Below are positions 17,163-58,510 of a stretch of DNA of 64,000 bases, piece after piece. The notes below the pieces were generated by a model, which did no database searches, was not told the origin of the DNA, and was given only the letters and a program-made list of their open reading frames with translations. Origin of the DNA: Octopus sinensis (Eukaryota); assembly GCF_006345805.1 (NCBI RefSeq), contig NC_043001.1, forward strand, positions 65,100,001-65,164,000, given 5' to 3'. Positions within the stretch are counted from its first letter, which is position 1. Each line of letters begins with the position of its first letter. A program made the position numbers and the translations under genes.

Positions 17163-20100
17163 TGTTGTGAATATCGCTAGTCAATAGAATTCAAAGTTCT
17201 GGAACTTGCGAGAATGTTTACAAGGTGTCTCGATTTTTGGTTTACATTATTATTACAATCTTGAGTTTTACAGTTGGAATAAACAGACTTCGCACCTGTC
17301 TGGAGTACCACTGTGTTTTCTTCTTTGTGAGTAAACAAGAGAAGTATATTGAACCACAGACAACACACCTATCTGGATTATTACTCTATTCTTTGTAAGT
17401 AAACAAGAGAAATATAACAAATTGGCATCGCCAATAGGATACTGTTGTCATTTTTGTGAAGTGACATCTTATGATGGGGTAAAAAAGACTATTCTTGTAG
17501 AGTGGACTTTTTACTTTGGCGCTCAGATATAATTATTTGAAAGGTAAACAACCAGTTTTGCACATATGCTTCATTTTAGATAAAGCAATAATTTAACTAT
17601 TTTTACATTGATAACAATGGCAAAACAAAGCGGTGAGCTGATAGAGTTACTCAACTTCAGAGGGAACAAATGGAGGGATAGACACAACAGTACAGAGAAG
17701 ATATGGAAGCTTTGAGAAGGCTGATTCAAGTTCACATTTCTGAAAAAGATTCCAGTCCAAGTTCCCGTATTCCAACTTCTACTGCTATCCCACCATTTGT
17801 TGCTTTTGACTCAGCATCTGAATTGTGGCCTGATTATTGGACAAGATTCTGCACCTTTATTATGGCAAACACTGTACCTGACCAGCACAAGGCTCAAATG
17901 TTTTTGACAAATTAAACTGTTGCCATTTATAAACAACTGGCGAATCTGGCTAATCAACAGAGTCCACCAAAGGATATTAATGAGCTGACAAAAGAGAAAA
18001 ATGCCAGCTTTATGAAGGAACAATTTAACCCAGAACATTTCAAGTTCTCGAGTGACATGCAACAGAAGCCTGGTGAAACTCTCCAGGATGTTGCTACCTG
18101 TGACTTTCCTTCTATAACAAACCCTCAAGACGAAGCTCTTAGATACAGATTCGTATGTTCTGTCAGCAATAAAGCTGTCTTAAAGGCTCTTTATAAGATC
18201 AAGGACACGCTGTCCAAGTCGCAACTGAGACCAAAGATGCAGCAAAGGTTGTCAAATACACTGTCTACAATTCCAAGACCAGGCCTGTCAACAAGATCGA
18301 GCAAACCCAGAATAAGGGTCAATGAATAAACCACCAGCAGTCTAATTCCACAGACCCTGAGTTGAAGTCTTACAGATGTGGAAAGGCCTATAAAGTGACA
18401 AACTGCTCCTGCAAAGAAGTCAAATGTCACTTTTGTGACAAGAAAGGACATTTGGAAGCTGTTTGTAAGAAGAAGCAATGGGAACATTGTTCCAAACCTT
18501 CTGTGAAGAGAATCACAGAATCCTGAGTGAATTTCCTGATGATACTTCTAAGTTAGTTGTACCAATAACTATCCAGGACCAACAGTTCATGATGGAACTT
18601 GACACTGCAATTACTAGAAATTTCGTTTCTTTGCTGATCTGGAAACAACTAGGAAAACTGAAGCTGGATGATGTCAGACATCGTTACAAGTCTGCCAGCA
18701 AGCATGACCTGCCTGTGCTGGGAACTTTCATGGCTGAAACCAAGAATCCAATGACTGGTAAAGAAAGCACAATTCCTTACATTGTCACCAAAATCCTTGA
18801 CCTGAACTTGCTGGGATAAAACGATATCCAGACACTAGGAATTTCTGTAGACAATGCTCTTGGACTGAAATGTATAGAGAGTTAAGACAAGAGTAAGCAT
18901 GCAAAAACATCACATCCTAAATCCTCTAACGAGCTTAAACTTCCCTGCAATGACATTGCCACAATCTCTGTGATGAGTTTCCAAATCTTTTCAAAGAAGA
19001 ATTGGGATGTCTTAAGGATTTCAAACTGGAAGTAAAATTCAAGTCTGATGTGAAGCTGTTTTTTCACATGGCATGACTGGTTCCATTCACTCTTTGTGCT
19101 GACCTGGCCAAATATTACGAAGAAGGTATCGCAAAGGAGTCTGGAAGCAAGTCCAGTTCAATGAGTACGGAATGCCAGTGGTACCGATTTGCAAAGCACA
19201 TAATCTGGGAACACTGAAACCCAAGTTACAGATTTGTGATATCTACTCAGTTGGCATCAACAATCAGCTAGAAGAACACTGTCATCCAATGCCACTCCTA
19301 GAGGAACTGATGCAGAAGCTGGGAGGTGGATGCGGTTATACAAAGATTAACTTTGCTGATGCTTACAACCAGACCAGACAGGCAGCAGAGAGTCAACGAA
19401 GGCTAGCTCTCAGCACACTTCGTGGAGTACTCCTGCAGCAACAACTCCCATTTGGAATTAAATCAGTGCCTGCTTACTTCCTGGAGATTATGGAAAATCT
19501 GACCAGTGATCTGCCTGGAGTTGCTGTTTTCCAAGATGATATGCTTGTTAGCAAGAAAGACACAAATAACCATTTGAGCAACCTGAGGCATTTGCTCTCT
19601 CGTCTGAACGACAAAGGACTCAAGTGTCACCATGAAAAGTGCTTGTTCACACAAACCAATGTGGACTATCTTGGCCACACCTTATCAGCCGAAGGAATCG
19701 TGAAGGGATCCAAAGTTGAGGCAGTCATGAAGATGCCACCTCCTATAGATGTCTCAAGCTGAAAGTCTTTCTTGGGTTTGGTTCAGTTCTACAGGAAGTT
19801 TATCCCAAACCTGGCCACTATGGTTGAGCCACTTTACTATTTAACCAAGAAGGCACTTCCTTGGAAGTGGGGAGATGAGGAGCAAAGAGTGTTTAAACAG
19901 TTGAAAAGATTACTATCTTCAGATCAAGTCCTTGTACATTTCAACCCAGACAAGCCTCTTGGACTGGTTTGTGACGCATCCAACGTCAGAATTGGAGCTA
20001 TCTTGTTTCATCGCTATCTAGATGGAAGTGAGTGCCGATTTGCCAATGTGTCCAAGACTCTCACATTTGCGTAAAGAAACTACAACCAAATCCACAAGGA

Positions 20101-22857: not shown

Positions 22858-24552
22858 CATCGTCATCATCATCATCATTTAACGTCCGCTTTCCATGCTA
22901 GCATGTGTTGAACAATTTGACTGAGGACTGGTGAACCAGATGGCTGTGCCAGGCTCCAATCTGATCTGGCAGAGCTTCCACAGCCGGATGCCCTTCCTAA
23001 CACCAACTACTCCGAGAGTGCAGTGGGTGCTTTTACGTGTCACCTGCATGAGGGCCAGTCTGGTGGTACTGGCTATGGCCATGCTCGAAATGGTGTTTCT
23101 TTACGTGCCACCTGCACAGGAGTCACTCCAGCGGCACTGGCAACGACCTTGCTCGAATGATTTGTTTAAGTGCCAGTAAGGTGACGCCGGTAACGATCAC
23201 GCTCAAATGGTGCTTTTTACATGACCACCGGCATGGAAGCCAGACACCTGCTCTGGCAGTGATCCTGCTTGGATGGGGCTGTTAGTGCTCCACTGGCACG
23301 GGTGCCAGTCATCGAATTTGGTTCAATTTCGATTTCACTTGCCCCAACAGGTCTTTGCAAGCAGAGTTTAGTGTCCAATGAAGGGAGGTTGGCATGGGAG
23401 CCAGTTGTTGGATTTGGTTCGATTTCGAATTCAATTTCGATTTCACTTGCCTCAACAGGTCTTCGCAAGCAGAGTTTTATGTCCAAAGAAGGAAAGGTAT
23501 GCATAAGTGGGCTGGCTACAACCCTGGAAAAGGCCACAGGTTGTGGTCTCACTTGTCCTGCCGGGTCTTCTCATGCACAGCATATTTCCAAAGTTCTCGG
23601 TCACTAGTCATTGCCTCGGTGATGCCTAATGTTCGAAGGTCGTGCTTCACGACCTTGTCCCAGGTTTTCCTGGGTCTACCTCTTCCACAAGTTCCCTCAA
23701 CCACTAGGGTGTAGCACTTTTTCACACACCTGTCTTCATCCATTCTCGCCACATGACCATACCAGCGTAATCGTCTCTCTTGCACACCACAACTGATGCT
23801 TCTTAGGTCCAACATTTATCTCAAGGTACTTACACTCTGTTGAGTATGTACACTGACATTACACATCCATTGGAGCATACTGGCTTCATTTCTTGCGAGC
23901 TTATGCATGTCCTCAGCAGTCACGGCCCATATTTCACTGCCATGTATCATGGCTGTTCGTACACATGCATCATACAGTCTGCCTTTTACTCTGAGCGAGA
24001 GGCCTTTTGTCACCATCAGAGGTAAGAGCTCTCTGAACTTTGCCCAGGCTATTCTTACTCTAGCAGTTACACTTTCAGCACACCCACCTCCGCTGCTGAC
24101 TTGGTCACCTAGGTAATGGAAGCTATCAACTACTTCTAGTTTTTCTCCCTGGAACGTGGCGGAAGTTGTTCTCCACACATTTTCAGTGTCTGTTGCTCCT
24201 GAGCATCTGCCACATACAAAAACTATCTTCCTAGTTAGCCTTCCTTTGATATTGCTGCACCTCTTATGTGTCCATAGCTTACACTGGGTACATCTTATAG
24301 AGTTTCTACCTACGCCTTTTCTACAGATCGAGCAGGGTCATCTACCTGAAGGCGTTTGTGGTTTGTCTACCTTCCTACTTATTAGGACTTTGGTTTTATC
24401 GAGTTTGACTCTAAGGCCCTCATGATTCTAATCCTTGCTTCCACACTTGAAACTTCTCCTCTAGTTCTGATAGTGACTCAGCAATTAGAGCAAGATCATC
24501 AGCATAGAGGAGCTCCCAGGGGCATCCTGTCTTGAATTCCTCTGTTATTGCC

Positions 24553-24555
<3 letters not shown>
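22858..24555 (-). mobile_element. RTE LINE, 3' half (RT C-terminus with PHD-like insert, 3' UTR, (CAT)n tail)
   Basis: ELLYADDL region at about 24480-24520, FQGEKLEVVDSFHYLGDQ, RRLRWYGHVARMDE, GRGRPRKTW and the (CAT)n tail. Confidence 0.92.
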
Positions 24556-28202: not shown

Positions 28203-30854
<2,652 letters not shown>

Positions 30855-30878
30855 TATCTATCTATCTATCTATCTATC

Positions 30879-33800
30879 ATTACAAAATGAAGAACTCGTC
30901 ATGGTCCCATACTACATGGGACAAAGAGTAAGATAAAAATAATGAATGTTCCACCCGAAATCCAACCAAAATGGATAACATTGGCGATATGTTATCATTT
31001 AAAATCGATCAACATATTAGAAATCGCCGTTGTTAAAAATGATAATTGGAGTGGGAAATCGATAGAAGTCACTATTCAAATCGATGAGTCTTCTATCGAG
31101 AATTTACCAAATATTATATATTTAGAGAATGGACAAAGCCTATATGTGGTGGCGGAGGCGAAAAAAACTATGTTGTTACCTCTGTGGCAGCCCAGACCAC
31201 TTAATTGCAAAGTGCGTTTTGGTACAGAAAAAAACAATAAAATTTGCAAACAAAACAGAAAACAAATAAAAAACAACCTTTGCTACCAACACCACCAAAC
31301 CCACAACTGATGCAAGAATTTTATAGAAATATGGAACAACGCCAAGAACAACAACAAACTAGCAAACAAACCCCAACAACATCACCAATAAGAGAAACAG
31401 CACCACCACAATTATCGTTGACGTCGCAACCAAATAAAGAAGCAAAACCACAACCAACATCAAAAGACAGACCAACACCAGCACCAAGGACGACAACTAA
31501 CAAAACAAATGACAATGACGAGAAGACAAATTCTACCCCTAATACCACAACAACACAAACACCGCACAAAACAACAACACTTTATACAAACATGCATATT
31601 GATGCAAATGCTTTGCTTTTACCCCCTTCTGATTCGTCAGACTTTTCGTCTAACGACGAAAGTTCGACAGAATGGCAAATAGCCACAGGGGGTAAAAGGA
31701 AAAAAAAAACCCACCAAACAAGCAAGTAAAGTAGGGATATATTTAACTCCTGACAGCTCCTTACACAAACCATCAATGACCCCACAAAAACACACACACA
31801 ACTAACAGCAATAGACACAGAAAAAAAAACTAAAGGAATACATTGCATCTAACACAAACATTTGTGAAGATGACTTTAAAGTGAAAAATCATCCACGCAC
31901 TACACCACCGACACACATAAAAATACTACACATCACACAAACGTAGCACTACACACTCAAAACCATCTTTCCAAATGCGGTCGGGGAGTTTCAAAAGTAT
32001 CTATCGAAAAAGCTTTATAAACACCTCCTCAAAGACATTTCAAAAGAAGAGGAAAAAAACTCAAACTTTCGAAATGAGTAAGTAACCTTTCCTCTCGTCT
32101 CTTTCAATGTTTGTGAAACATCAATTATGCTTAAATTAGGTTGTGTGAATGTGCGTGGCTTGGCATCGGCTTGGAAACAAGGTTACCTTCTAAATGACAT
32201 CAAGTCACTGAACGTTGATATAGTAGCTATCAGTGAAACCAGACACAGTAAGCCGCAGGCCCTCGTGTCCATGTTTGGCGGTCAATTCGACATTTATTTT
32301 TCTTCCTGTCTGCCAAACATGGGTGGTGGTGGTATCGCGGTGCTTTTTCTAAAGTGTCTAAATGTAAAAGTAAGACCAATATTCCTAGACCCGGAGGGTA
32401 GGCTGGTTGTCTTGGATGTGGATGGCAGAAATGGGTGTGCATTCCGTCTGATGGCAGTTTATGCACCGTCCTTAACGGGTCGGGCGGATTTCTTCAGACG
32501 TCTAGAGGTTTTCTTGGGTACGTCTAGACCTTTACTGTTAGTAGGGGATTGGAACGCTACCTTGGACACGCATCCAGACTATGTGGGAATGGATAGGAAT
32601 AGAAGGGGATGTAAGTGCCTCAAAGACCTGCTCAGACGTTTCCATTTGTCTGACAGGTTCCGACTCGACCATCCGAATGTGCCAACGTGGACTTGGACAA
32701 ACCGTGTCGGATCGTCGAGATCTTATCTAGATAGAATTCTATGCAGGATAGAGGATAGGGATAGTGTAGGATGTCCACAATTTAAAATAGTCATTTACAC
32801 AGGTCACAAATTTGTGACGTGTATGCTCGACTTAGATAAGACACATAGACAGAGTCCCAGTTACTGGAAACTGAACACGTCGCTCTTAGTGCTACAGGTT
32901 TACAGGAACCGGATTAGCGAGTTAATTAAGAGGGCGTTGGCGGGAGCCATCGTTAACAACTGCTGGTGGTTTGCCCTGAAAATGGCAATAAAATCGGAAT
33001 CAATTAGGTTTAGCAAGGAATTAGCGATAGATCGAAATAGAATAGAGGGAGACTTAGTTAAGAAACTAGAAGAGGCAGCGCAACCAAGGTGCTGGCTGCG
33101 AGGATGGCCCTCGACCAACACCTCAACGCCAAACACGAAGGTTGCGTCGTCAGAGCTAAAATGCGTGCCTTAAGGAACAAAGGGATCGAAGCTGCGCGAG
33201 AGGCCCGAGAGGTCTCTAATAGATCAACATGGATGCAGTTTACCCGAAAGGATGTGTGAGGCCTTTCAACAGCACTTTGCTCGACTGTTTGGTGCGAGTG
33301 GTGGGTCGGAACGCAGGATGAATTTCAGTGCCTACCTGACCGACCTGCCGCGGCTCTCGGCAAGAGAAGCGGAGTGTTGTGAGAGTCCCATCACAGCTGC
33401 CGACATACGGGATGCGATGGCGGGCTGCGCGAGGGATAAGTCGCCTGGTTTGGATGGTATACCCTACGAGCTGTATTGTCAAATGCCAGACTTGTTTGGC
33501 GACCTCTTGGCATCTGTCTACTGCAACTGGCAACAAAACGGGAGAATCCCCGGTTTTGTGAGCCGAGGTGCAGTGATGTTGCTGAAGAAAGACCCAAACA
33601 AGGGGAAATTTATAGATAATTTCAGGCCCATCACCCTGCTCAACGCAGATTTGAAAATTTTAGCCAAAGTAATAGCCGAGAGGTTGGCGCTTGTCATTGG
33701 TAAACTGGTCGACAAGGCGCAAGCATGCGCCATGCCAGGCAGAACCATGCGTGACAACCTCCATCTGATGCGCTACATCTTGGACAGGCATTCCAGAGAG

Positions 33801-36800
33801 GGGGGGATTTGAAGGTGAAGGGGAGGAAAGGGAGGAAGGAATATTGAACATTCCAGAGAGGGGGATTTGAAGGTAAAGCGGAGGAACGGGCGGAAGGAAT
33901 ATTGAACATTCCAGAGAGGGGGATTTGAAGGTGAATGGGAGGAAAGGGAGGAAGGAATATTGAACATTCCAGAGAGGGGGATTTGAAGGTAAAGGAAGGA
34001 AAGGGAGGAAGGAATATTGAACATTCCAGAGATGGGGATTTGAAGGTGAAGGGGAGGAAAGGGAGGAAGGAATATTGAACATTCCAGAGAGGGGGATTTG
34101 AAGGTAAAGGGGAGGAACGGGCTGAAGGAATATTGAACATTCCAGAGAGGGGGAGTTGAAGGTAAAGGGGAGGACAGAGAGGAAGGAAATTGAACATTCC
34201 AGAGAGGGGGATTTGAAGGTAAAGTCGAGGTAAGGGAGGAAGGAATATTGAACATTCCAGAGAGGGGGATTTGAAGGTGAAGGGGAGGAAAGGGAAGAAG
34301 GAATATTGAACATTCCAGAGAGAGGAATTTGAAGGTAAAGGAGGGAGGAATGGGCGGAAGGAATATTGAACATTCCAGAGAGGGGGATTTGAAGGTAAAG
34401 GGGAGGAACGGGCGGAAGGAATATTGAACATTCCAGAGAGGAGGATTTGAAGGTGAAGGGGAGGAAGGAATATTGAACATTCCAGAGAGGGGGATTTGAA
34501 GGTAAAGGGGAGGAAAGGGCGGAAGGAATATTGAACATTTCAGAGGGGTATTTGAAGGTAAAGGGGAGGAACGGGCGGAAGGAATATTGAACATTCCAGA
34601 GAGGGGGATTTGAAGGTAAAGGGGAGGAACGGGCAGAAGGAATATTGAACATTCCAGAGAGGGGGATTTGAAGGTGAAGGGGTGGAAAGGGAGGAAGGAA
34701 TATTGAACATTCCAAAGAGGGGGATTTGAAGGTGAATGGGAGGAAAGGGAGGAAGGAATATTGAACATTCCAGAGAGAGGAATTTGAAGGTAAAGAGCAG
34801 GAACGGGCGGAAGGAATATTGAACATTAGAGAGGGGGATTTGAAGGTAAAGGGGAGGAAAGGGAGGAAGGAATATTGAACATTTCAGAGAGGGGGATTTG
34901 AAGGTAAAGGGGAGGAACCGGCGGAAGGAATATTGAACATTCCAGAGAGGGGGATTTGAAGGTAAAGACAAGGAACGGGCAGAAGGAATAGTGAACATTC
35001 CAGAGAGGGGGATTTGAAGGTGAAAGGGAGGAAGGAATATTGAACATTCCAGAGAGGGGGATTTGAAGGTGAATGGGAGAAAAGGGAGGAAGGAATATTG
35101 AACATTCCAGAGAGAGGAATTTGAAGGTGAAGGGGAGGAAGGGGAGGAAAGGGAAGAAGGAATATTGAACATTCCAGAGAGGGGGATTTGAAGGTAAAGG
35201 GGAGGAACGGGCGGAAGGAATATTGAACATTCCAGAGAGGGGGATTTGAAGGTAAAGGGGAGGAACGGGCGGAAGGAATATTGAACATTCCAGAGAGGAG
35301 GATTTGAAGGTGAAGGGGAGGAAGGAATATTGAACATTCCAGAGAGGGGGATTTGAAGGTAAAGGGGAGGAAAGGGCGGAAGGAATATTGAACATTTCAG
35401 AGGGGTATTTGAAGGTAAAGGGGAGGAACCGGCGGAAGGAATATTGAACATTCCAGAGAGGGGGATTTGAAGGTAAAGGGGAGGAACGGGCAGAAGGAAT
35501 ATTGAACATTCCAGAGAGGGGGATTTGAAGGTGAAGGGGTGGAAAGGGAGGAAGGAATATTGAACATTCCAAAGAGGGGGATTTGAAGGTGAATGGGAGG
35601 AAAGGGAGGAAGGAATATTGAACATTCCAGAGAGAGGAATTTGAAGGTAAAGAGCAGGAACGGGCGGAAGGAATATTGAACATTAGAGAGGGGGATTTGA
35701 AGGTAAAGGGGAGGAAAGGGAGGAAGGAATATTGAACATTTCAGAGAGGGGGATTTGAAGGTAAAGGGGAGGAACCGGCGGAAGGAATATTGAACATTCC
35801 AGAGAGGGGGATTTGAAGGTAAAGACAAGGAACGGGCAGAAGGAATAGTGAACATTCCAGAGAGGGGGATTTGAAGGTGAAAGGGAGGAAGGAATATTGA
35901 ACATTCCAGAGAGGGGGATTTGAAGGTGAATGGGAGAAAAGGGAGGAAGGAATATTGAACATTCCAGAGAGAGGAATTTGAAGGTAAAGGGGAGGAACTG
36001 GCGGAAGGAATATTGAACATTCCAGAGAGGGGGATTTGAAGGTAAAGGGGAGGAACGGGCTGAAGGAATATTGAACATTCCAGAGAGGGGGATTTGAAGG
36101 TGAATGGGAGGAAAGGGAGGAAGGAATATTGAACATTCCAGAGAGGGGGATTTGAAGGTGAATGGGAGGAAAGGGAGGAAGGAATATTGAACATTCCAGA
36201 GAGGGTGATTTGAAGGTAAAGGGGAGGAAAGGGAGGAAGGAATATTGAACATTCCAGAGAGGGGATTTGAAAGTGAAGGGGAGGAAAGGGAGGAAGGAAT
36301 ATTGAACATTCGAGAGAGGGTGATTCGAAGGTGAATGGGAGGAACGGGCGGAAGGTATATTGAACATTCCAGAGAGGGGTATTTGAAGGTGAAGGCGAGG
36401 AAAGGGAGGAAGGTATAGTGAACATTCCAGAGAGGGGAATCAGTTGTTGTATAGGAGGAAAGGGTGGAAGGAATATTGAACATTCCAGAGAGGGTGATTT
36501 GAAGGTAAAGGGGAGGAAAGGGAGGAAGGAATATTGAACATTCCAGAGAGGGGGATTTGAAAGTGAAGGGGAGGAAATGGAGGAAGGAATATTGAACATT
36601 CGAGAGAGGGTGATTCGAAGGTAAAGGGAGGAAGGAATATTGAACATTCCAGAGAGGGGGATTTGAAGGTGAAGGGGAGGTAAGGGAGGAAGGAATATTG
36701 AACATTCCAGAGAGCGGGATTTGAAGGTGAATAGGATGAACGGGCGGAAGGTATATTGAACATTCCAGAGAGTGGTATTTGAAGGTGAAGGGGAGGAAAG

Positions 36801-39205
36801 GGAGGAAGGAATATTGAACATTCCAGAGAGGGGGATTTGAAGGTGAATGGGAGGAACGGGCGGAAGGTATATTGAACATTCCAGAGAGGGGGATTTGAAG
36901 GTGAAGGGGAGGAAAGGGAGGAAGGTATAGTGAACATTCCAGAGAGGGGGATCAGAAGGTGAATAGGAGGAAAGGGTGGAAGGAATATTGAACATTCCAG
37001 AGAGAGGAATTTGAAGGTGAAGGGGAGGAAGGGGAGGAAGGAATATTGAACATTCCAGAGAAGGTGAATGGGAGGAACAGGCTGAAGGTATATTGAACAT
37101 TCCAGAGAGGGGTATTTGAAGGTGAAGGGGAGGATCGGGCGGAAGGAATATTGAACATTCCAGAGAGGGGGATTTGAAGGTGAAGGGGAGGAACGGGTGG
37201 AAGGAATATTGAACATTCCAGAGAGGGGGATTTAAAGATGAAGGGGATGAAAGGGAGGAAGGAATATTGAACATTCCAGAGAGGGGGATTTGAAGGTGAA
37301 GGGGAGGAAGTGGAGGAAGGAGTATTGAACATTCCAGAGAGGGGGATTTGAGAGGTGAAGGGGAGGAAGGGTAGGAAGGAATATTGAACATTCCAGAGAG
37401 GTGTATTTGAAGGTGAATGGGAGAAAAGGGAGGAAGGAATATTGAACATTCCAGAGAGGGGGATTTGAAGGTGAATGGGAGGAACGGGCGGAAGGAATAT
37501 TGAACATTCCAGAGAGGGGGATTTGAAGGTGAATGGGAGGAACGGGCGGAAGGAATATTGAACGTTCCAGAGAGGGGGATTTGAAGGTGAATGGGAGGAA
37601 CGGGCGGAAGGAATATTGAACATTCCAGAGAGGGGGATTTGAAGGTGAAGGGGAGGAACTGGCAGAAGGAATATTGAACATTCCAGAGAGGGGGATTTGG
37701 TGCTGATAAATTTGGATCAGTCTAAAGCTTTAGATAGGGTCGACCGTCGGTACTTGGCGGCCGTCCTCAGGGCGGCTGGCTTCGGTCCCGTCTTCCGCGG
37801 TTGGATCGCTGCCTTGTATAGCGGCATCCGATCGGTAAGTCGGGTGAAGGGTCGCCTGTAGAAACCGTTTGACATCACGTGTTCGGTCCGTCAGGGATTT
37901 CCACTGTTGGCGCGTCTGTATATATTGACTCTCGAGCCGCTACTGCGGAAGCTGGCAACACTGAGGGGCATCCCACGGGAACTGGGTTGCGGGACGAGCG
38001 TGTCGGCATATGCGGATGATGTCACCTTCATAGTGTCGAGCGAAAAGCACATCCAGATGATAGGCGAGACACTAAAAGAATACGAAACGGTGACGGGAGC
38101 GAAAATTAACCCGGAAAAGTCAGTGGGTTTGCTACTTGGCACCTGAAGAAGGAAGCCCATACCATCCAACTGTGACTCAGTAGTGGGACGCTGGACAGAC
38201 GAGCCGGTTAAATTGCTCGGGGTCTGGTTCAGTCCGGACCTCCAAATGGATAAGAACTGGGACAAGATCACGAGTAGAGTGGTCGCTCTCAGCCAAACAT
38301 GGGCTGAGAGAAAGCTGCCTCTAAAAGGTCGGGCGGAGGTGGCTAATGCGTATATCGCATCAATCATCGATTACCACCTGACCGTCGTGCCTTGTTCCGA
38401 TGCTACCATCATGAAACTGGAACGCATACTCTTCCGCTTCCTGTGGAAGGTTGGCGTTCCGATGGTGATGCGATCCATTTGTTGTCAACATCTGTTAAAT
38501 GGAGGACTGAGCATGCCGTGGTTAATGATGCGCAGGCATGCGCTGACACTGCGACATCTCTGGAACTTCATCGATGACGGTGAACAGGTGTAGGCGCCGT
38601 TTGTGAGACGCGCCTTCCCGCAGCTCGTCTCACTGACCGAACTGCAAACGTGGATCAAAAAGAGACCGAAACTGCCGTCCAGGATCAAACTTGTGCAACT
38701 TACAAACGACCAAAGCGTTCTAAAGAGGACTAGTAGAGAGGAGGTCTGACGACACACTCGGGGCAAACCTGGGAGTCGACGAGAAATTCCTAACTCGCCT
38801 TTTCAGGACGACGTTTGGGCCGGGGCCTATGGATAACTTCCAGAGATCCCCGGCTTGGCAATGCTATCGGGACGCACTACCTGTTCGAGAGAAAAGCTAC
38901 AGACACGGTTCGAAAACCACTGGACCGACCTGCCCGAGATGCGATCAGAACGACGAAACCGTTCTGCACGCACTCGTGCAGTGTCCAGATATTTCAGAGC
39001 TGTGGACCTTCATCGAACAGCTGTTGTCGCGTGTAGGATGAGCCCGCTTATCGGTCGAGTCTATCGTGAATATTGTTCCGCCACCTTCCTGTAAATGGGA
39101 AGGAAAAACAGTTTTTGTAACACTGATAGCTATGGCGAAAGAATGTGTGTGGTGGACACGTTTGAAAGGCCTACAAACAAACACTTTCCTCTCTGGTGTT
39201 TATTG
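30879..39205 (+). mobile_element. Tx1/L1-clade LINE copy 2: partial ORF1 (CCHC knuckle), ORF2 APE and RT, split by a 3.9-kb minisatellite and cut at the 3' end by an RTE fragment
   Basis: ORF1 remnant with CYLCGSPDHLIAKC (about 31175-31220) and WQIATGGKRKKK. APE 32127..33173 (NVRGL, ISETRH, VYAP, GDWNA, SYLDR). RT from 33252-33788 resumes collinearly at 37700 (LINLDQSKALDRVD). Confidence 0.92.
33789..37699. repeat. Purine-rich 58-bp minisatellite, about 67 units, with higher-order structure
   Basis: Consensus cattccagagagggggatttgaaggt[g/a]aaggggaggaa[a/c]ggg[a/c]ggaaggaatattgaa. The same variant units recur at an offset of 857 bp. Confidence 0.97.
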
Positions 39206-39694
39206 CACCCGAGCATCTGCCACATACAAAAGCTTCCCAGTTAGCCTTCCTTTGATCTTACTACACCTCTTATGTGTCCATAGCTTACACTGGGTACATC
39301 TTATAGAGTTTCTACCTACACCTCTACTACAGATCGAGCAGGGCCATCTACCCGAAGGGATTTGTGGTTTGCCTGCCTTACTACTTATTAGGACTTTGGT
39401 TTTAGCTATGTTGACACTAAGGCCCTTTGATTCTAATCCTTGTTTTCACACTTGAAACTTCTCCTCTTGTTCTGATAGTGACTCAGCAATTAGAGCAAGG
39501 TCATCAGCATAGTGGAGCTCCCAGGGGCATCCTGTCTTGAATTCCTCTGTTATTACCTGGAGGACTATGATAAATAGGAGGGAGCTGAGGGCTGAACCTT
39601 GGTGGACCCCTACCTCTACCCTGAATTCTTCGGTATACTCGTTGCCAACCCTCACCTTACTGGCAGCATCCCTGTACATGGCTTGCACAGCTTG
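39205..39694 (-). mobile_element. RTE LINE internal fragment (RT YADD region and PHD-like insert)
   Basis: ORF 39446..39688: VGVHQGSALSSLLFIIVLQ...ELHYADDLALIAES. Confidence 0.9.
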
Positions 39695-40574
39695 AACTAG
39701 GAAAGGGTCTGCTTAGCATAGTTTAAACGAGACGGCAAATGTTGATAATAGTAAAATAGACTTGAAAAATCTGAGAGTTCTCCGCCAGACATTCTAAGAC
39801 AGAATTTAGGGGATAAATAAGTAACGGTGTGATAACTTTAATAGCTGAATGAGTCGATGAACATGTTGTTAAGTTATCTTAAGGGAACAGCAAGGAAGAC
39901 AAGCCTATTTGAAAACTATATTTACATGATGGCATGTTACTGAACTGGAAAGAATAATGAACAGAGCTAATAGCGGAGGGGTTTATGATCTGTGCTGAAA
40001 TAGTAAGGTGGATGAAACGAGGTTGAAAAGATGGAAAAATTCTTAACTGGACATCAAGGATCTGTTATTCTTCGGCAGGAGGTTGGAAGTGTGTGGGCTA
40101 GTTTATATAGAGCAAAGCAAGTGGTAATCGAAAGAGGGAGACATAGTGAAAGCACGGAGAGAGAGAGAAACAGACAGAGTAAGATAGAGAGAGAGAGAGA
40201 AAGAAGGGGGGAAGTGGTCAAGAACACGTGGGAGGAAATAGTGCCTCGAACTAGGAAGGGGTCTGCTTAGCATAGTTTAAACGATACAGCAAATGTTGAT
40301 AATAGTAAAATAGACTTGATTAAATGGTATTTACTGGTATTAATAAAGGAAAATTGAGGTTAAAAAATATGTTAAAATTATATATTAAATATTAACAATT
40401 TTAGTCTATGCAGATTTTTAAAAATTATTTTAAATAGTGAATATACCAGCATAGCTTTATAAAAGCTGAGTATGATATTTATAGACTTAGAGTAATTTTG
40501 TAAATAAATAAATAAGAGCTAGTTTTAAAAATAAAATAAAATAAATAATCATTGGTAGAACATTATAGAAAACG

Positions 40575-41320
40575 GTAAAATGGTTTGTGGAAGCAAGGAT
40601 TAGAATCGAAGGGCCTTAGAATCAACCTAGCCAAAACCAAAGTCCTAATAAGTAGGAAGGTAGACCAATCACAAACGACTTCAGGTAGATGGCCCTGCTT
40701 GATCTGTAGAAAAGGTGTAGGTAGAAACTCTATAAGATGCACCAAGTGTAAGCTATGGACACATAAGAGGTGCAGCAATGTCAAAGGAAGGCTAACTAGG
40801 AAAATAGTTTTTGTTTGTGGCAGATGCTGAAAATGTGCAGAGACCAACTTCTACCACATTCCAGGGAGAAAAACTAGAAGTAGTTGATAGCTTCCGCTAC
40901 CTTGGTGGTCAAGTTAGTAGCGGGGGCGGGTGTGCTGAAAGTGTAACTGCTAGAGTAAGAATAGCCTGGGCAAAGTTCAGAGAGCTCTTACCCCTGCTGG
41001 TGACAAAAGGCCTCTCGCTCAGAGTAAAAGGCAGACTGTATGATGCATGTGTACGAACATGGTAGTGAAACATGGGCTGTGACTGCTGAGGATATGCGTA
41101 AGCTCGCAAGAAATGAAGCCAGTATTCTCCGATGGATGTGTAATGTCAGTGTTCATACTCGACAGAGTGTAAGTACCTTGAGAGAAAAGTTGGACTTAAG
41201 AAGCATCAATTGTGGTGTGCAAGAGAGACGTTTGCGCTGGTATGGTCATGTGGTGAGAATGGATGAAGATAGCTGTCTGCAAAAGTGCCACACCCTAGCA
41301 TTTGAGGAAACCTGTGGGGA
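40575..41320 (+). mobile_element. RTE LINE internal fragment (PHD-like insert and RT C-terminus)
   Basis: WPCLICRKGVGRNSIRCTKCKLWTHKRC...FVCGRC, EVVDSFRYLG and RRLRWYGHVVRM. Confidence 0.9.
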
Positions 41321-43399: not shown

Positions 43400-45495
43400 G
43401 GCTTGTTTTATAAGGTTAAAGAATATATTTGAGTCATTATGTTGGAAGAATGTTATAAAATTTTTTCATACAGTAACATAGTTTTTGAAGAAATTACCGG
43501 TTTCGTGTTAACTTTTCAAATTTCTCAAGTGTCTTTACCTACATCATGTTATGTCTTCGTTATGAAGTGCAAAGAAGAGTTCCCGGTAGGGGGGGGTAAT
43601 GAGCGATTTCTTCCGGTATAAGGGAGATAATCGCTTTATATTTCTTTTCCCTTTATTTAATGGGGTGAGTTTCTCTGCATAAGAATGTTAGAGTGGTTAA
43701 GTTTGGGTTTATATTTTTCAATGAAGAATGTTTCCTTGTTTAATCTAATTTGTGTTGGTGTTCCAATAGCACATTGATAGAATGGAAAGATTAAAAATTG
43801 TGGTAGTAGTTGCTTTGCGCATTTCTCAATATGCTCACTAAAGGGTATCATTCTGTATTCTGGGAATGCAATCTGTTGTCGATGCAGTGTGCATCTACGT
43901 CTGAGTGATAGTCCCGTGGACCCCACGTAGTTTTGGTGGCAGCCCAAGCACCTTATGACATAAATAATGTTTTCAGAAGCACTAGTAAAATTAGATTTGA
44001 TCTTGAATTTTTATCCCTCTTTGAAAAGGAATTCTGATCCTTCTAGAAGGTTTGGGCATGTTGCGCAGTTTGGTCTACCACATTTTTCTACTTTTGCATC
44101 CGTAGTTTCAGAAAAACAATTTTGCCTTTGTGAGAATCTTTTTAAGTGATTTAGGTTGTTTGTAGCTTTTAATGATTTTATGTATGTTTAGAATTTCCTT
44201 TAATATGGGGTCCTTATGAAGTATTGGCAAATTCTGGGTGATGATGGTGAAGGCTTCTTTGTTTCTGGGGTTGTATGTGGATATGTAAGGCAGTATTTTC
44301 GGGGAAGGTGTGTTGTTGTGTTGAACTTTTCTCAAAGTTTCTATGTCAATTTCTGATCCCATCCTCTATGAGTTGAGCTGGGTAGTGTCTGTCAATTAGG
44401 GTGTTTTTGAGTTCTTGTAGTCTAAAGTTTCTGGTATTTTGTTCTGACACTATTGTGCATATCCTTCTTGCAAGGTTGAAAGGGATGTTTGTTTTAATGT
44501 GTCTTGGGTGGCATGAATCAAAAAGTAGGTATTGTTTAGCGTCTGTGGCTTTGTAAAAAATGTCTGTTTCTATTTTAAGGTTAATTTTTTTAATTAGTAT
44601 ATCTAAGAATGGAAGCACCTTTTGGTTGTATTCCATTGTGAACTGTATATTTGGGTTGATGCTGTTCAATAGGTTTTTGAATTTTAGGAGTTTATCTGTG
44701 TTTTCATTCCAGAGTATAAAACAATCGTCCAGGAATCTTTTCCAATTCTCTTTTATGTATTGAGAGAGGGGGTTTCCAAAGGTCGATAAAGATTCCTGGT
44801 ATACAATTATTTCCAGGTAGCCCATTGTTAGGTTCACAATGACTGGTGCTGCCCTTGTACCCATAGCAATTCCGGATTTTTGACGGTAAAATGTATTGTC
44901 AAACATGAAGTAGTTAATATGTAGGATGAATTCAACCGATTTAATAATGAATTCTTTACTGATCCTTTTTGGTATTTCTTCCGGAAATTGGTCCAGCCAG
45001 AACTGTATTGCCTCTAGTCCATAATTATGAGGTATACTGGTATATAAATTAACTACATCAAATGAAACCATGATTGTTTCTTCCTTGACTTTTTTTGGAA
45101 GGTGGTTTAACATATCCAAGTCATCTCTGATATGACTATCGATATGTTTAAGGTAGGGTTTCAGGAGGATGTCCATAAATAGACTTAATCTGTGTTTTTC
45201 ACAGGTTGGGCCAGCTACAATGGATCGTAGTTTTAGGTCCCCCGGGTTAGGTGTGTGTATGTATGTCTTTGGTGATTTTTTAAAGGTTTCATTTATAATT
45301 TGGCTTTTATGTATTTTTGGCAGACCATTTAAAGTTTTCTAGAAAGTCAATCTTTTTGGTTGTTAGTTCCTTTTCATGGGTTTTAATTAGTGAAGACAGA
45401 GATTTCATTATTTTTCGCGAGATGACTTGGATATGTTAAACCACCTTCCAAAAAAAGTCAAGGAAGAAACAATCATGGTTTCATTTGATGTAGTT
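43400..45495 (-). mobile_element. Penelope-like retroelement (RT and GIY-YIG), 5'-truncated, frameshifted
   Basis: RT VSFDVVNLYTSIP, QKSGIAMGT, WKRFLDDCF, LPFLDILI (44346..45176). Linker 44108..44362. GIY-YIG CHQNYVGSTG...KETFFIEKYKPKLN (43657..43947). Hammerhead-like motif at 43489-43525 and a 5' inverted duplication. Confidence 0.93.
43489..43525 (-). ncRNA. Degenerate minimal hammerhead in the Penelope 3' region (probably inactive)
   Basis: Minus strand AGAAAT-TTGAAAA-GT taac AC-GAAA-CCGG-TA-ATTTCT. Stems I and II, a palindromic stem III and a GUA site are intact, but the core CUGANGA has two changes. Confidence 0.55.
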
Positions 45496-45519: not shown

Positions 45520-48500
45520 AGATTAGATTAGTGCTCCATCATGGGTTAGCAACCATTATCTCTGTGTATGCCCCTCAGCCAGGGCTACCAGATGGACAGA
45601 AAGACCGATTCTATGATACCCTCTTGCAGACTACCACGTTGACGAATGACAGGGACCTTCTCTTTGTGGCTGGCGACTTCAATGGACATGTTGGACAACA
45701 TGTCGGGGTCTTCCATGGTATACATGGAGGCTATGGTTTTGGCTCTCACAATGAGGAGGGAACCAGGCTGCTGGAGTTCTGTGGCACAAATGATCTTATA
45801 GTTTGCAATACTAACTTCAGAAAACCTGCCAGCCACCTAGTCACCTACCGCTCTGGCAGACACACTAGTCAGATCGACTACATCCTCACCAGAAAAAGGG
45901 AAAGATGGCTGCTTATGAATGCCAAAACCTTCCCAGGTGAAGAATGTATCCCATAACATAGACTAGTAGTTAGCGACTTCAGGATCAGGGCTAAATGGAT
46001 ACCCAGAAGATGACCAGCAAGGAGAAGAAGGGTCTGGAGACATAAAGATCCTGCAAATGGACAGAGATTTAGAGACATATTACTTGAAGCCTTTGACAAA
46101 ATAGAAGGGGATATAGCTTCACATGAAGACAACTGGAGGTTTCTATGGGACAACCTGCTGAGAGCCACTGACCAGATCTGTGGATGGTGCAAAGTCACCT
46201 CTCGACCCAAAATAACGTGGTGGTAGAACAATGTTGTTGACAGGGCTATTAGACAAAAGAAACAGGCTTGGAAGGACTGGAAGAACGGTGGTAGCAGGAA
46301 AGTGTATCAGACTGCCAGAAGGGAAGCTAGGATGCAGGTTTATTTAGCCAGAGGGGAAGCAGATAAGAAAAAATTTGCCAATGTTCTGTATCATGAGGAT
46401 CAAAGACTTGAGGTATTTCGTGTTGCAAGACAGTGTATGAGAGAGAATCGTGATGTGGTAGGAGAGAAATGTGTTGGCATGGATGATGGTTTACTTGTGC
46501 TGAATGAGGATGCAAAGAGAGAGGTTTGGAGACGCCACTATGAAAGGTTGCTGAATAAAGAAAATGAATGGGAGATAGAGAGTCTGCCAAATGTCGACCC
46601 AACAGAGGGACCAGCTATCCGAGTTGACAGTTCCTTGGTAGATAAGGCAATTAGAAGCATGAAGACAGGGAAAGCCCCAGGCCCATCAGGAATTACTGCA
46701 GAGATGCTCAAAATATCTGACAGTGTCAGCTATAGCCTAGTCACCCGTATAGTTAACCAGTTGATACACGAAGGAGTCATACTCAATGACTGGTGTAGCA
46801 GCATAATAGTCAACTGCTACAAAGGTAAAGGTGATGCTTTAGATACAAATAATTACAGAGGTATCAAGCTGTTGGATCAGGTAATGAAGGTTATGGAGAG
46901 GGTCATAGCCCAACTGATTAGGGAGAGAGTCAGCTTGGGTGAGATGCAGTTTTGGTTTCGTGCCAGGGAAAAGCACCACTGATGCTATATTTCTGATTAG
47001 ACAGCTGCAGGAGAAATACCTAGCTGAAGATAAGCCCCTGTACCTGGTTTTCGTTGACATGGAGAAAGCCTTTGACAGGGTCCCCCGATCCCTTATCTGG
47101 TGATCAATGAGGAAACTAGGGATAAATGAATGGTTAGTTAGAGCTGTGAAAACCATGTACAGGGACGCTGTAAGTAAGGTGAGGGTTGGCAATGAGTACA
47201 CAGGGTAAAGGTAGGGGTCCACCAAGGTTCAGTCCTCAGCTCCCTCCTATTTATCATAGTCCTCCAGGCAATAATGGAGGAATTCAAGACAGGATGCCCC
47301 TGGGAGCTCCACTATGCTGATGATCTTGCTCTAATTGCTGAGTCACTATCAGAACTAGAGGAGAAGTTTCAAGTGTGGAAACAAGGATTAGAATCGAAGG
47401 GCCTTAGAATCAACCTCGATAAAACCAAAGTCCTAATATGTAGGAAGGCAGGCAAACCACAAATCCCTTCAGGTAGATGGCCCTGCTCAATCTGTAGTAG
47501 AGGCATAAGTAGAAACTCTATAAGATGTACCCAGTGTAAGCTATGGACACATAAGAGGTGTAGTAAGATCAAAGGAAGGCTAACTAGGAAGATAGCTTTT
47601 GTATGTGGCAGATGCTCGAGAGCAATAAACACTGAAAATGCTCAGAGACCAACCTCCGCCACATTCCAGGGAGAAAAACTAGAAGTAGTTGATAGCTTCC
47701 GTTACCTAGGTGACCAAGTCAGTAGCGGAGGTGGATGCACTGAAAGTGTAGCTGCTAGAATAAGAATAGCTTAGGCAAAGTTGAGAGAGCTCTTTCCTCT
47801 GCTGGCAACAAAGGGCCTCTCGCTCAGAGTAAAAGATAGACTGTATGATGCATATGTACGAACAGCCATGCCACATAGCAGTGAAACATGGGCTGTGACT
47901 GCTGAGGACATGCGTAAGCTCAGAAGGAATGAAGCCAATATGATTCGATGGATGTGTAATGTCAGTGTGCATACTCGACAGAGTGTAGGTACCTTGAGAG
48001 AAAAGTTGGACTTGAAAAGCATCAGATGTGGTGTGCAAGAGAGATGACTGTGCTGGTATGGTCATGTGGTGAGAATGGAGGAGGATGGCTGTGTGAAAAA
48101 GTGCCACACCCTAGCAGTTGAGGGAACCTGTGGAAGAAGTAGACCCAGGAAGACCTGGGATGAAGTGGTGAAGCACAACCTTCGAACATTAGGCCTCATC
48201 AAGGAAATGAATAGCAACCGAGACTTTTGGAAATATGCTGTGCTTGAGAAGACCCAGCGAGACAAATGAGACCATAACCTGTGGCCCATGCCAGGAGCGT
48301 AACCAGCCCACTTATGTGTACCTTTTCCTTCCTTGGACACTAAATTCTGCTGTTGGGGCAAGTGAAATCAAAATCAAAATCACATTCGATGACTGGCATC
48401 CGTACTAGCGGGGTGCAAAGAGTACCATGCGAGCGTGATCATTGACAGAGCAGCTAACCAGCTTCCATGCCAGTGGCACATAAAAGGCACCATTCGAGTG

Positions 48501-53640: not shown

Positions 53641-54322
53641 CTCACATAAATCCTATCGGTGTCACTGTTAATGTGAAAATTGTATGTATGTATGTATGTA
53701 TGTATGTATGTATGTATGTATGTATGTATGCAAGTATGCATGTATGTATGCAAGTATGCATGTATGTATGTATGTATGTATGTATGTATGTATGTATGTA
53801 TGTATGCTTATATACACACACATGCACACAAAGACAATTTATTTACAATGCTAACTCTACATTTATAAAATAATAACAAGTGAAAAATTTTGTTGTTTTA
53901 TTAGTTTTATTTAAAAATTCATTTTATAAAATTATTTCATTGCTTTATTTATTATAACAAATCAAAAAATAGATGTCGTGGATTGCTCTTGTGTTAATTA
54001 ATTATCAATATTTTAAGTTAAAATCTCTTAAATGTGAAAGATAATCACTTTTGAAACATTTTTCCAGCCTTGGTCACACAAAGGAATATAAACCACAAGA
54101 TACACTTTCAGCTAAACCATGATTTGATCCCTTCAGTCCAAAATATCAACAAAGCTTCAGGGTCCCACAAAATACCAAGTGCACACATTTAGGGTCTGAA
54201 ATAACTCTTACACACACAATTCTATTTATTTATTCATTGCCAACATTATTAAATCCTTAGAATATGGAAACTGCACCTGTATATTCTAAAGACCTCATCT
54301 CCCTCCTATTTATATCCTAAAA

Positions 54323-54914: not shown

Positions 54915-54929
54915 AGAGAGAAAGAGCGA

Positions 54930-55005
<76 letters not shown>
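54915..55005. repeat. (GA)n microsatellite
   Basis: Seen directly. Confidence 0.95.
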
Positions 55006-55006
<1 letters not shown>

Positions 55007-56855: not shown

Positions 56856-58094
56856 ATATATGTACACAACAATATAATTTAAAATTATATCTGTTTATGC
56901 ACATATACACAACACATCAGTTAAAAACTGGAATATACATCCACTTATACACACAACTACTGTTCATCTGTTGTTTCTTTACTTCAGTTAGAAGAGATAA
57001 AAGAATGTTACATATGTTATCAAAATAATGAAGCACCAAAATTTCCTCGGATTTGCAGCAGCAGAACCTGGGGTTTCTGAAATAAATGAAAGAATTTATG
57101 TAAACAAATATTATGTTTAATTTGTGGGGAAGCCCACTGTATGTGTGTGTGTGCACACGCGCATGTTGTGTATGTGTGTGTGTGTGTGTGGAGGAGGTGT
57201 GTGTGTGCACACGCGCATGTTGTGTATGTGTGTGTGTGTGTGTGGAGGAGGTGTGTGTGTGTGTGTGGAAGAGGTGTGTGCATGTACATCTTTATGATTG
57301 TTTCACACTGTTTGACAACTAGTGTTGGTTTGTTTACATTCCAGAAACTTAGTGGTTTGGCACAAATTGACCCCAGTGCTTAAAAATAAGTACTAGAGTC
57401 AATTTCATCAACATCCTTCAAAGTGATACTCCAGTAAGGTCACAGTCAAATGATTGAAACAAAAGAACAGTAAAATAAACAAACAAACATATATGTGTGT
57501 ATGTTCCTTTGCATACATACACACAAATAGTCATGCATGGGTGTAATCCTGCACACACAGGTGGGAATGTGTGTTGTTTTCCTACACACACATATTGTCA
57601 TGTATGTGTTTACCTACAAAAATGCACACACATGCATACAAAGTCAAGCATTTGTCTTCACTTTCACATACATGTGTAACCATATACATTCACCTACATA
57701 CAAACATGTAGCCACATGTGCATACACATATAGCCATGTATGTGAGTTCACCTGCACACACACACATGAAAGTATGCATGCATGCATACACACAAACACA
57801 AGCACACACACACAATGAGTCAAAGTGCACAACACTATCCTTTTCCTCTAATTTACAGTCTTGTGCTAGTAAAATACAACTCCATCATCCTTGATTGCCT
57901 CACCATCAAACAGGAACTGACACCTACCTATCTAATGATCAACTGTTGCATGTGTGCGTATATATATATATACATATGTGTGTGTGTGTGTGTGTGTATG
58001 TGTTTATATATAGACGTGTGTGGGTATTTATATATAGACGTGTGTGGGTGTTTATATATATACATGCTTTAAATTCATTTACAGGAAACATTTT

Positions 58095-58218
58095 TCAGAT
58101 ATATTATATACATATATATATATACGTATATATATTATATGTATAATATATATATATATATATACATATATATATACATATATAATATACATATATATAC
58201 ATATATATATATATTATA

Positions 58219-58252
<34 letters not shown>

Positions 58253-58353
58253 CATATATATATACATATATAATATATATATTATATATTATATATATAT
58301 ATATTATATATATATATACATATATATTATATATGTATATATATATATATAAC

Positions 58354-58402
<49 letters not shown>

Positions 58403-58510
58403 CATATATATATATGTATATAATATATATGTTATATTTACATATATATATATACATATATATTATATTGTATTAATATATTATATATACATATATATAT
58501 ATACATATAT

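What the first reader, a model, noticed from the sequence alone, without database searches (positions are those of the whole stretch)
33789..37699. 3.9-kb purine-rich 58-bp minisatellite inserted inside a LINE reverse transcriptase
The RT stops at ...RYILDR (33788) and resumes collinearly at VLINLDQSK (37700). Compared with copy 1 (gacagg-gtagttaaggaacctggcaatggtggg-gcactgatc), about 27-30 bp are missing, there is no target-site duplication, and the unit has no clear similarity to the LINE. This points to capture of a foreign repeat at a double-strand break (templated insertion or rolling-circle eccDNA integration) followed by expansion, i.e. a dispersing satellite. The strong strand asymmetry leaves the minus strand almost stop-free in all three frames.
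Basis: partly seen in the sequence, partly recalled or inferred. Interest (0 to 1): 0.7.

Follow-up and report, generated by a model that had tools for sequence, protein, structure and literature searches.

The report
Purine-rich minisatellite interrupting a dead LINE
A 3.9-kb non-coding tandem repeat of 58-bp units replaces 27 bp in the reverse-transcriptase gene of a decayed LINE retrotransposon, most likely as the scar of a repaired DNA break that later grew by unequal exchange; this is an ordinary kind of feature with unusually clean junctions.

Summary
Three DNA relatives of the LINE carry a conserved 27-bp stretch at that point; this copy lacks it. There is no target-site duplication and there are no transposon ends. 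Junction microhomology is 0 and 1 nt. The unit matches no part of the LINE or the rest of the window better than shuffled sequence does.

The array starts at unit position 1 and ends at position 21. That fits capture of a fragment that was already tandemly repeated, joined into a double-strand break, rather than duplication of local sequence.

Later growth in place is visible: a 777-bp block is repeated 857 bp away with one mismatch, an older three-unit duplication exists, and a 9-bp sub-repeat has slipped. No array-wide higher-order period supports a single rolling-circle origin.

I found no donor array, but no collection I could search holds this genome. "Dispersing satellite" and "eccDNA" are therefore untested.

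The stop-free minus strand is a compositional by-product, not a gene.

Verdict: a real feature and a new member of a known kind (satellite or filler capture at a break inside a transposon). Interest is low to moderate.

The parts
33789..37699 (+). Minisatellite array of 68 full units plus a 21-nt partial unit. Consensus: CATTCCAGAGAGGGGGATTTGAAGGTGAAGGGGAGGAAAGGGAGGAAGGAATATTGAA. Plus strand is 76% purine.
34352..35128 (+). First copy of a 777-bp block that recurs 857 bp downstream with 1 mismatch. Indicates recent unequal exchange, or an assembly duplication.
35209..35985 (+). Second copy of the 777-bp block.
36307..36480 (+). Units 45-47, which carry the GGTATA variant. They are the older duplicate partner of units 54-56 (36819-36992), about 3-9% diverged.
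30881..39197 (+). LINE copy 2. It has its 5' region but is decayed, is interrupted by the array, and its 3' end is cut off by another transposon at 39197.
32127..33173 (+). LINE copy 2 apurinic/apyrimidinic-type endonuclease ORF (Pfam Exo_endo_phos).
33252..33788 (+). LINE copy 2 reverse transcriptase, N-terminal part (RVT_1 profile positions 5-57). Ends ...RYILDR at a codon boundary.
37700..38593 (+). LINE copy 2 reverse transcriptase, C-terminal part (RVT_1 profile positions 70-204). Contains 2 in-frame stops.
38829..39041 (+). LINE copy 2 zf-RVT zinc-binding domain, in a shifted frame.
28351..30880 (+). LINE copy 1. It is 5'-truncated and about 76% identical to copy 2, with an intact RT site, AATAAA and a (TATC)6 tail.
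28796..28822 (+). The 27 bp of copy 1 (VVKEPGNGG) that are missing from copy 2 at the array site.

Best explanation
This is a non-coding minisatellite sitting in a repaired break inside a dead LINE copy.

Shown:
- One LINE (endonuclease, reverse transcriptase, zf-RVT) is split in its reverse transcriptase.
- 27 bp conserved in relatives are gone.
- 3911 bp of an unrelated purine-rich 58-bp repeat lie in their place, flush against LINE sequence on both sides.
- There is no target-site duplication and there are no transposon ends. Junction microhomology is 0 nt on the left and 1 nt on the right.

Inferred:
- A double-strand break in the LINE lost 27 bp and was closed by end joining.
- The repair captured a fragment of at least about 1.4 units of a repeat that was already tandem. 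The fragment could have been linear DNA, circular DNA, or copied by template switching.
- The fragment's ends fell at arbitrary phases of the unit (position 1 and position 21).

Shown for later history:
- The array changed in place by unequal exchange and slippage.
- A 777-bp block is duplicated at an 857-bp offset with 1 mismatch.
- An older 3-unit duplication lies 9 units away.
- Units 65-67 are nearly identical neighbours.
- A 9-bp sub-repeat, GGGAGGAAR, is present once, twice or three times, giving 49-, 58- and 67-bp units.

The array most likely has no function. The LINE was, or became, inactive.
For: - Array and coordinates.
- Collinear RT flanks.
- The left and right halves are equally distant from copy 1 (75.5% and 76.6%), so they are one element.
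- 27 conserved bp absent. None of 12 protein relatives has a repeat at the site.
- The unit is unrelated to any part of either LINE copy, including the 3' UTR and the neighbouring transposon. Best p = 0.045 among 20 tests.
- The unit is absent from the rest of the window.
- Non-integer copy number with different junction phases.
- Edge units are as close to the consensus as central ones (0.055 and 0.057 against 0.085).
- Internal duplications of different ages.
- Published precedent exists for satellite blocks inserted with truncated monomers at the junctions and small target deletions of 2 bp and 36 bp: PMC7403614, read.
Against: - No donor array was found. Exact 21- to 22-mers of the unit gave 0 hits in JGI metagenome contigs, IMG/VR viral contigs and GTDB genomes. 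The array's long minus-strand ORF has no protein relatives. None of these collections holds this eukaryotic genome, so the negative result is weak in both directions.
- I could not obtain a copy of the same LINE subfamily. The closest protein relative is 69% identical, so the exact pre-insertion sequence of this copy is inferred from relatives about 76% identical in DNA (copy 1).
- The order of events is not resolved. The break could have followed LINE insertion, or the array could already have been in the LINE's source copy.
Confidence: 0.55

Rival explanations
1. Birth at this locus. A short unrelated filler sequence, not itself a repeat, was inserted at the break and then duplicated in place. 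On this reading the minisatellite is locus-specific and has no donor array elsewhere.
For: - Most minisatellites are locus-specific (general knowledge).
- No other copy was found anywhere I could search.
- Growth in place clearly occurs.
Against: - The array is flush with LINE sequence at both ends and ends in a 21-nt partial unit.
- Duplication of a unique filler would leave an integer number of units or non-repeat remnants of the filler. The alternative is that the filler already carried a 21-nt direct repeat, which means it was already about 1.4 units of a tandem repeat.
- Edge units are not degenerate.
Confidence: 0.17
2. Template switching during retrotransposition. While copying the LINE RNA, the reverse transcriptase jumped to a purine-rich repeat transcript and back to the LINE RNA 27 nt further on. 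The copy would then have been born with the repeat inside it.
For: - There is no target-site duplication around the array, the flanks are collinear, and a short stretch is skipped.
- Template switching by LINE reverse transcriptases is established (general knowledge, not tested here).
Against: - It needs two switches that land in the same RNA 27 nt apart.
- No microhomology at the left junction and only 1 nt at the right.
- There is no evidence for a repeat transcript.
- It still needs a pre-existing repeat elsewhere.
Confidence: 0.1
3. The array derives from the LINE's own sequence at this site, either by local amplification or because the 21-nt partial unit is native LINE sequence. The partial unit reads HSREGDL in frame with both flanks.
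For: - The 21-nt partial unit is in frame with both flanks and has no stop.
- There is a weak ungapped resemblance between the unit's ACATTCCAGAGAGGGGG and relative L001's ACATCATAGAGAGGGTG, 13 of 17 positions.
Against: - Being in frame has a 1 in 3 chance.
- The best local alignment of the unit to the site gives p = 0.08 for L001 and p = 0.56-0.62 for copy 1, before any correction for multiple tests.
- All relatives have V[VG]KEPG[NM]GG or [VI]KDD.EA at the site, never HSREGDL.
- A 58-bp LINE segment would be expected to stay about 70-75% identical to the unit without gaps. It does not.
Confidence: 0.06
4. It is an insertion of a mobile element that carries internal tandem repeats, or it is an assembly artefact.
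For: - Transposons with central tandem repeats are known (cited in PMC11610590).
- The 777-bp block at 99.9% identity could be an assembly duplication.
Against: - There is no non-repeat terminal sequence, no terminal inverted repeats and no target-site duplication. The array abuts the LINE directly.
- A chimeric join would not place collinear halves of one LINE, 27 bp apart, on either side of the array. Only the copy number could be wrong.
Confidence: 0.07

Closest known systems
Rsp-like satellite blocks inserted into 1.688 satellite clusters on the Drosophila simulans and D. mauritiana X chromosome (Sproul et al. 2020, PMC7403614)
   Same: A tandem-repeat block lies inside another repeat. Truncated monomers sit at the junctions, there is no target-site duplication, and small deletions of the target occur (2 bp and 36 bp there, 27 bp here). 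Expansion by unequal exchange follows at the locus.
   Different: - In Drosophila the junctions show 4-7 bp of microhomology, many loci share the same junction, and eccDNA was measured.
- Here microhomology is 0 and 1 nt, only one locus is known, the target is a LINE coding region, and nothing is known about eccDNA.
Cast1-Cast9 euchromatic satellites of Tribolium castaneum (PMC11610590)
   Same: Short satellite arrays lie outside heterochromatin, often next to transposon-like sequence. The proposed routes of spread are transposons or eccDNA.
   Different: That claim rests on genome-wide array maps and Southern blots of eccDNA. Here there is one array in one 64-kb window.
Templated or filler DNA insertions at double-strand breaks repaired by end joining (for example captured mitochondrial, retrotransposon or distant genomic fragments; from general knowledge)
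   Same: Loss of a few to tens of bp at the target, 0 to a few nt of microhomology, no target-site duplication, and an insert unrelated to the target.
   Different: Such inserts are usually tens to hundreds of bp and their donor can be identified. This one is 3.9 kb now, probably after growth in place, and its donor is unknown.
Tandem repeats that are an integral part of a transposon family (central repeats of non-autonomous elements, LINE 5' monomers, SVA VNTR; from general knowledge and as cited in PMC11610590)
   Same: A minisatellite lies physically inside a transposon.
   Different: Those arrays lie in non-coding parts and are shared by family members. This one destroys the reverse transcriptase, replaces conserved codons, and is absent from every relative examined.

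Membership tests
Minisatellite (VNTR-type tandem repeat) | Head-to-tail copies of a 10-100 bp unit | tested here: met
   Period 58 bp, 68.4 copies, 87% matches.
Minisatellite (VNTR-type tandem repeat) | Array of roughly 0.5-30 kb at a single locus | tested here: met
   3911 bp. It is the only occurrence in the window.
Minisatellite (VNTR-type tandem repeat) | Copy number varies between individuals | not testable with these tools
   This needs population or long-read data. The 99.9% identical internal duplication shows recent change but not polymorphism.
Dispersed satellite DNA family | Several arrays of the same unit at different loci | not testable with these tools
   One array in the window. 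There were 0 hits in metagenome, viral and prokaryotic collections, none of which holds this genome.
Break-repair capture (filler or templated insertion) | Loss of target bases at the insertion point | tested here: met
   27 bp conserved in copy 1, L001 and L002 are absent.
Break-repair capture (filler or templated insertion) | No target-site duplication and little or no junction microhomology | tested here: met
   The flanks are GGACAGG| and |GTGCTGA. Microhomology is 0 nt on the left and 1 nt (G) on the right.
Break-repair capture (filler or templated insertion) | An identifiable donor sequence elsewhere in the genome | not testable with these tools
   The genome is not available. No donor is present in the window.
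Transposon-derived tandem repeat (unit derived from the host element) | Unit homologous to host transposon sequence | tested here: not met
   Local alignments to all parts of both LINE copies, on both strands, do not exceed shuffles.
Insertion of a repeat-carrying mobile element | Element termini and a target-site duplication flanking the array | tested here: not met
   The array abuts LINE sequence directly at both ends.
Rolling-circle (eccDNA) amplification product | An array-wide higher-order period equal to the size of the circle | tested here: not met
   Mean unit distance is flat across lags (0.11-0.13), apart from the single duplication at lag 15. Later homogenisation could have erased such a period.
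Non-LTR retrotransposon with endonuclease, RT and zf-RVT (host element) | Exo_endo_phos endonuclease, RVT_1 and a C-terminal zf-RVT domain in that order | tested here: met
   Relatives are annotated in the cephalopods Argonauta hians and Acanthosepion pharaonis. I did not test assignment to a clade such as L1 or Tx1.

The most novel reading that the evidence does not exclude
The 58-bp purine-rich repeat belongs to a satellite family that is actively dispersing in a mollusc (probably cephalopod) genome. It would seed new arrays at chromosome breaks, or be carried along when a LINE reverse transcriptase switches template. This locus would then be a clean, datable example of a seeding event inside a transposon with known ancestral sequence.
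Probability: 0.12. Interest if true: 0.5.

Novelty: new member of a known kind. Interest (0 to 1): 0.2.

Why it matters
Because the target is a protein-coding transposon with known relatives, the state before the insertion can be reconstructed to the base. That is rare for satellite insertions, which usually land in anonymous or repetitive DNA. If the same unit forms arrays elsewhere in the genome, this locus gives an exact junction footprint for how tandem repeats seed new sites: a 27-bp in-frame loss, 0-1 nt of microhomology and arbitrary monomer phases. If no other array exists, it is simply one more locus-specific minisatellite in a transposon-rich region.

Tried and rejected
- **Native partial unit.** I considered that the 21-nt partial unit (HSREGDL, in frame) is native LINE sequence. 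I rejected it because all relatives carry V[VG]KEPG[NM]GG or [VI]KDD.EA at the site.
- **Unit derived from the LINE.** I checked for similarity to the insertion site, the rest of the LINE, its 3' UTR (pyrimidine-rich on the plus strand, so purine-rich on the minus strand) and the neighbouring transposon. Nothing exceeded shuffles.
- **Minus-strand ORFs as a gene.** ORFs of up to 664 aa have no homologues among 5.8 billion proteins and no Pfam match. The unit length is not a multiple of 3, and the consensus unit simply lacks stop trinucleotides on that strand.
- **Donor search.** Exact 21- to 22-mers gave 0 hits in JGI metagenomes (two scans), IMG/VR and GTDB genomes. These collections do not hold the host genome.
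- **Finding the window's own contig or identical LINE proteins.** Exact look-up found nothing on record.
- **Dating the array against LINE decay.** The LINE has at least 4 in-frame stops and several frameshifts. The estimate is too crude to compare with the unit divergence of about 12% pairwise, so I dropped it.
- **Structure-forming potential.** The 5-bp hairpin GGAAT...ATTCC is weak (z = -0.85 and -2.0). No G-quadruplex motif appears even with loops of up to 15 nt.
- **Other searches.** Rfam and tRNA scans of the window found nothing. Literature searches found no cephalopod satellite catalogue to compare with.
Full report
**Observation.**
- Tandem Repeats Finder reports one array at 33789-37699 with period 58, 68.4 copies, 87% matches and score 5680.
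- Cutting the array at the conserved CATTCC anchor gives 68 full units and a final 21-nt partial unit, CATTCCAGAGAGGGGGATTTG. Of the full units, 51 are exactly 58 bp; the rest are 47-49, 56-57, 59-60 or 67 bp.
- A 28-nt core of the unit occurs 67 times, all inside the array, against none expected from shuffles. A low-stringency BLAST of unit dimers against the window with the array masked finds only 9-12-nt chance words.
- The plus strand of the array is 76% purine, with G 40%, A 36%, T 17% and C 7%.

**The interrupted element.**
- The left flank translates to ...PGRTMRDNLHLMRYILDR, ending at a codon boundary at 33788. The right flank reads VLINLDQSKALDRVDRRYL... from 37700.
- Upstream lies an Exo_endo_phos endonuclease ORF at 32127-33173. 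Downstream lie the rest of RVT_1 and a zf-RVT domain at 38829-39041.
- Pfam RVT_1 matches profile positions 5-57 on the left and 70-204 on the right. A second, 5'-truncated LINE copy in the window (copy 1, 28351-30880) matches 5-204 without a break.
- The two halves of copy 2 are equally distant from copy 1: 75.5% over 462 bp and 76.6% over 1539 bp. They are therefore one element, not two insertions that happen to flank a repeat.
- The element is decayed. It has one in-frame stop and a garbled stretch between the endonuclease and the RT. There are at least three stops and a frameshift after the array. Its 3' end is cut off at 39197 by another transposon.
- The closest protein relatives are 69% identical, from an ENA and a JGI metagenome. 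The named relatives are cephalopod proteins from Argonauta hians and Acanthosepion pharaonis. The window is therefore probably molluscan, likely cephalopod. I did not establish this further.

**What is missing at the site.**
- A DNA alignment of copy 1, the two external relatives L001 and L002, and both flanks of copy 2 shows that all three relatives carry a conserved 27 bp, GTRGKTAARGAACCTGGCAWKGGKGGG, between ...GA(C/G)AGG and GC(A/C)CTGAT. Copy 2 has the array there instead.
- In a protein alignment, the 12 relatives that span the site have 8-10 ordinary residues there (VGKEPGMGGA, VKDDEEAA, IKDDTEAA). None has a repeat.
None of these is from the same subfamily.

**Junctions.**
- The left junction is ...TTGGACAGG|CATTCCAGAG... 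and the right is ...GGGGGATTTG|GTGCTGATAAAT....
- There is no direct repeat of the flanks and no non-repeat sequence between the LINE and the array. Nothing suggests the ends of a mobile element.
- I compared what each partner would have continued with: GTRGKT for the LINE on the left, and AAGGTG for the unit against GGKGGG for the LINE on the right. Microhomology is 0 nt on the left and 1 nt (G) on the right.

**Is the unit derived from the LINE?**
- I aligned dimers of the two main unit types and of the last unit against the insertion site of copy 1 and L001. I also aligned dimers of the two main unit types against all of copy 1 including its 3' UTR, against the 5' region, endonuclease-RT and RT-right parts of copy 2, and against the neighbouring transposon. 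Both strands were used, with mono- or dinucleotide shuffles as the null.
- Nothing stands out. The best result at the site is p = 0.08 (L001), and copy 1 gives p = 0.56-0.62. The best of 20 regional tests is p = 0.045.
- The final 21-nt partial unit is in frame with both flanks and would read HSREGDL. That has a 1 in 3 chance, and no relative has anything similar, so I do not take it as native LINE sequence.
- A segment of LINE sequence amplified in place should still align to the relatives without gaps at about 70-75% identity. It does not.

**Why a fragment that was already tandem is the best reading.**
- The array is flush with the LINE on both sides, yet it begins at unit position 1 and ends at position 21.
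- Duplication in place of a unique filler would leave an integer number of units or remnants of the filler at the edges.
- A non-integer array with clean edges is expected if a piece cut at random from an existing array, at least about 1.4 units long, was joined into the break.
- The edge units are also no more degenerate than the central ones. Mean distance to the consensus is 0.055 for the first ten, 0.057 for the last ten and 0.085 for the middle.
- Together with the 27-bp loss, the lack of a target-site duplication and the near absence of microhomology, this matches end-joining repair with captured DNA.
- The closest published cases are the Rsp-like satellite blocks inserted into 1.688 clusters in the Drosophila simulans clade. 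Those have truncated monomers at the junctions and target deletions of 2 and 36 bp, although they show 4-7 bp of microhomology (PMC7403614).
- The euchromatic Cast satellites of Tribolium are also comparable (PMC11610590).

**Growth in place.**
- Segment 34352-35128 recurs at 35209-35985 with a single mismatch, an offset of 857 bp or about 14.8 units.
- Units 45-47 pair with units 54-56 at 3-9% distance. Units 43-44 pair with 48-49. Units 65-67 are nearly identical neighbours.
- The GGTATA variant is confined to units 45-58.
- Units of 49 and 67 bp differ from the 58-bp unit by one copy of a 9-bp purine sub-repeat, GGGAGGAAR.
- Apart from the dip at lag 15 caused by the recent duplication, mean unit distance is flat across lags at 0.11-0.13. 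There is thus no array-wide higher-order period of the kind a single rolling-circle copy of a small circle would leave. Later homogenisation could have erased one.
- How many units arrived with the original fragment and how many were added later cannot be told.

**The stop-free minus strand.**
- Stops per frame are 72/73/74 on the plus strand and 4/3/2 on the minus strand, in 1303 codons.
- The consensus unit has no TAA, TAG or TGA in any register on the minus strand. At this composition a 58-nt sequence has about a 0.33 chance of that, and repeating it 68 times produces the long ORFs.
- The unit length is not a multiple of 3, and unit-length variants shift the frame.
- The 664-aa ORF has no relatives among 5.8 billion proteins and no Pfam match. 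It is not a gene.

**What could not be done.**
- Exact 21- to 22-mers of the unit gave no hit in JGI metagenome contigs (two scans), IMG/VR viral contigs or GTDB genomes. These collections do not contain the host genome, so the result says nothing about donor arrays.
- Exact look-ups of the window's LINE proteins found nothing on record. No same-subfamily LINE copy was available.
- The searchable library holds no cephalopod satellite catalogue.
- "Dispersing satellite", "eccDNA" and the order of events (break after LINE insertion, or array already in the source copy or acquired by template switching during reverse transcription) therefore remain open. The tests are listed under decisive next steps.

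**Verdict.**
- The feature is real and accurately described.
- The rivals are birth at this locus from a unique filler (0.17), template switching by the reverse transcriptase (0.10), a mobile element or an assembly artefact (0.07), and LINE-derived origin (0.06).
- This kind of event is already documented in insects, and minisatellites inside dead transposons are common. It counts as a new member of a known kind, of low to moderate interest. Its one attraction is that the sequence before the insertion can be reconstructed to the base.

Noticed in passing
window 28204-28351 and 30855-30880: The only two (TATC)n tracts in the window lie exactly at LINE boundaries. (TATC)~37 abuts the 5'-truncated start of LINE copy 1. 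(TATC)6 follows copy 1's AATAAA signal and is followed directly by the 5' end of copy 2. This suggests a (TATC)n 3' tail, or insertion targeted to that microsatellite, giving head-to-tail LINEs.
   Followed up: partly
window 39196-39699, 40586-41317, 23685-24554, 47135-48133: A second retrotransposon family with RT fragments and a PHD-like zinc finger is present in several copies at 85-91% identity. One copy cuts off the 3' end of LINE copy 2 at 39197. It includes an inverted pair at 39212-39450 and 40586-40828.
   Followed up: partly
window 6079-7218 (minus strand): An LTR-retrotransposon pol fragment (RVT_1 plus RNase H domains). Further RT fragments lie at 19172-19762 and 44346-45176, so the whole window is transposon-rich with no recognisable host gene.
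   Followed up: no
window 58099-58644, 53681-53806, 54915-55006, 57143-57261: Other simple repeats: (AT)~281 in a 23% GC stretch, (TGTA)~31, (AG)~46, and a perfect 54-bp GT-rich repeat present 2.2 times.
   Followed up: no
window 62612-62832: A third, short fragment of the same LINE family, 71% identical to 33443-33660. It does not reach the array site.
   Followed up: no
window 33789-37699: The unit contains a 9-bp purine sub-repeat, GGGAGGAAR, present once, twice or three times in the 49-, 58- and 67-bp unit variants. It also has a short palindrome, GGAAT-ATTGAAC-ATTCC, that folds only weakly.
   Followed up: yes
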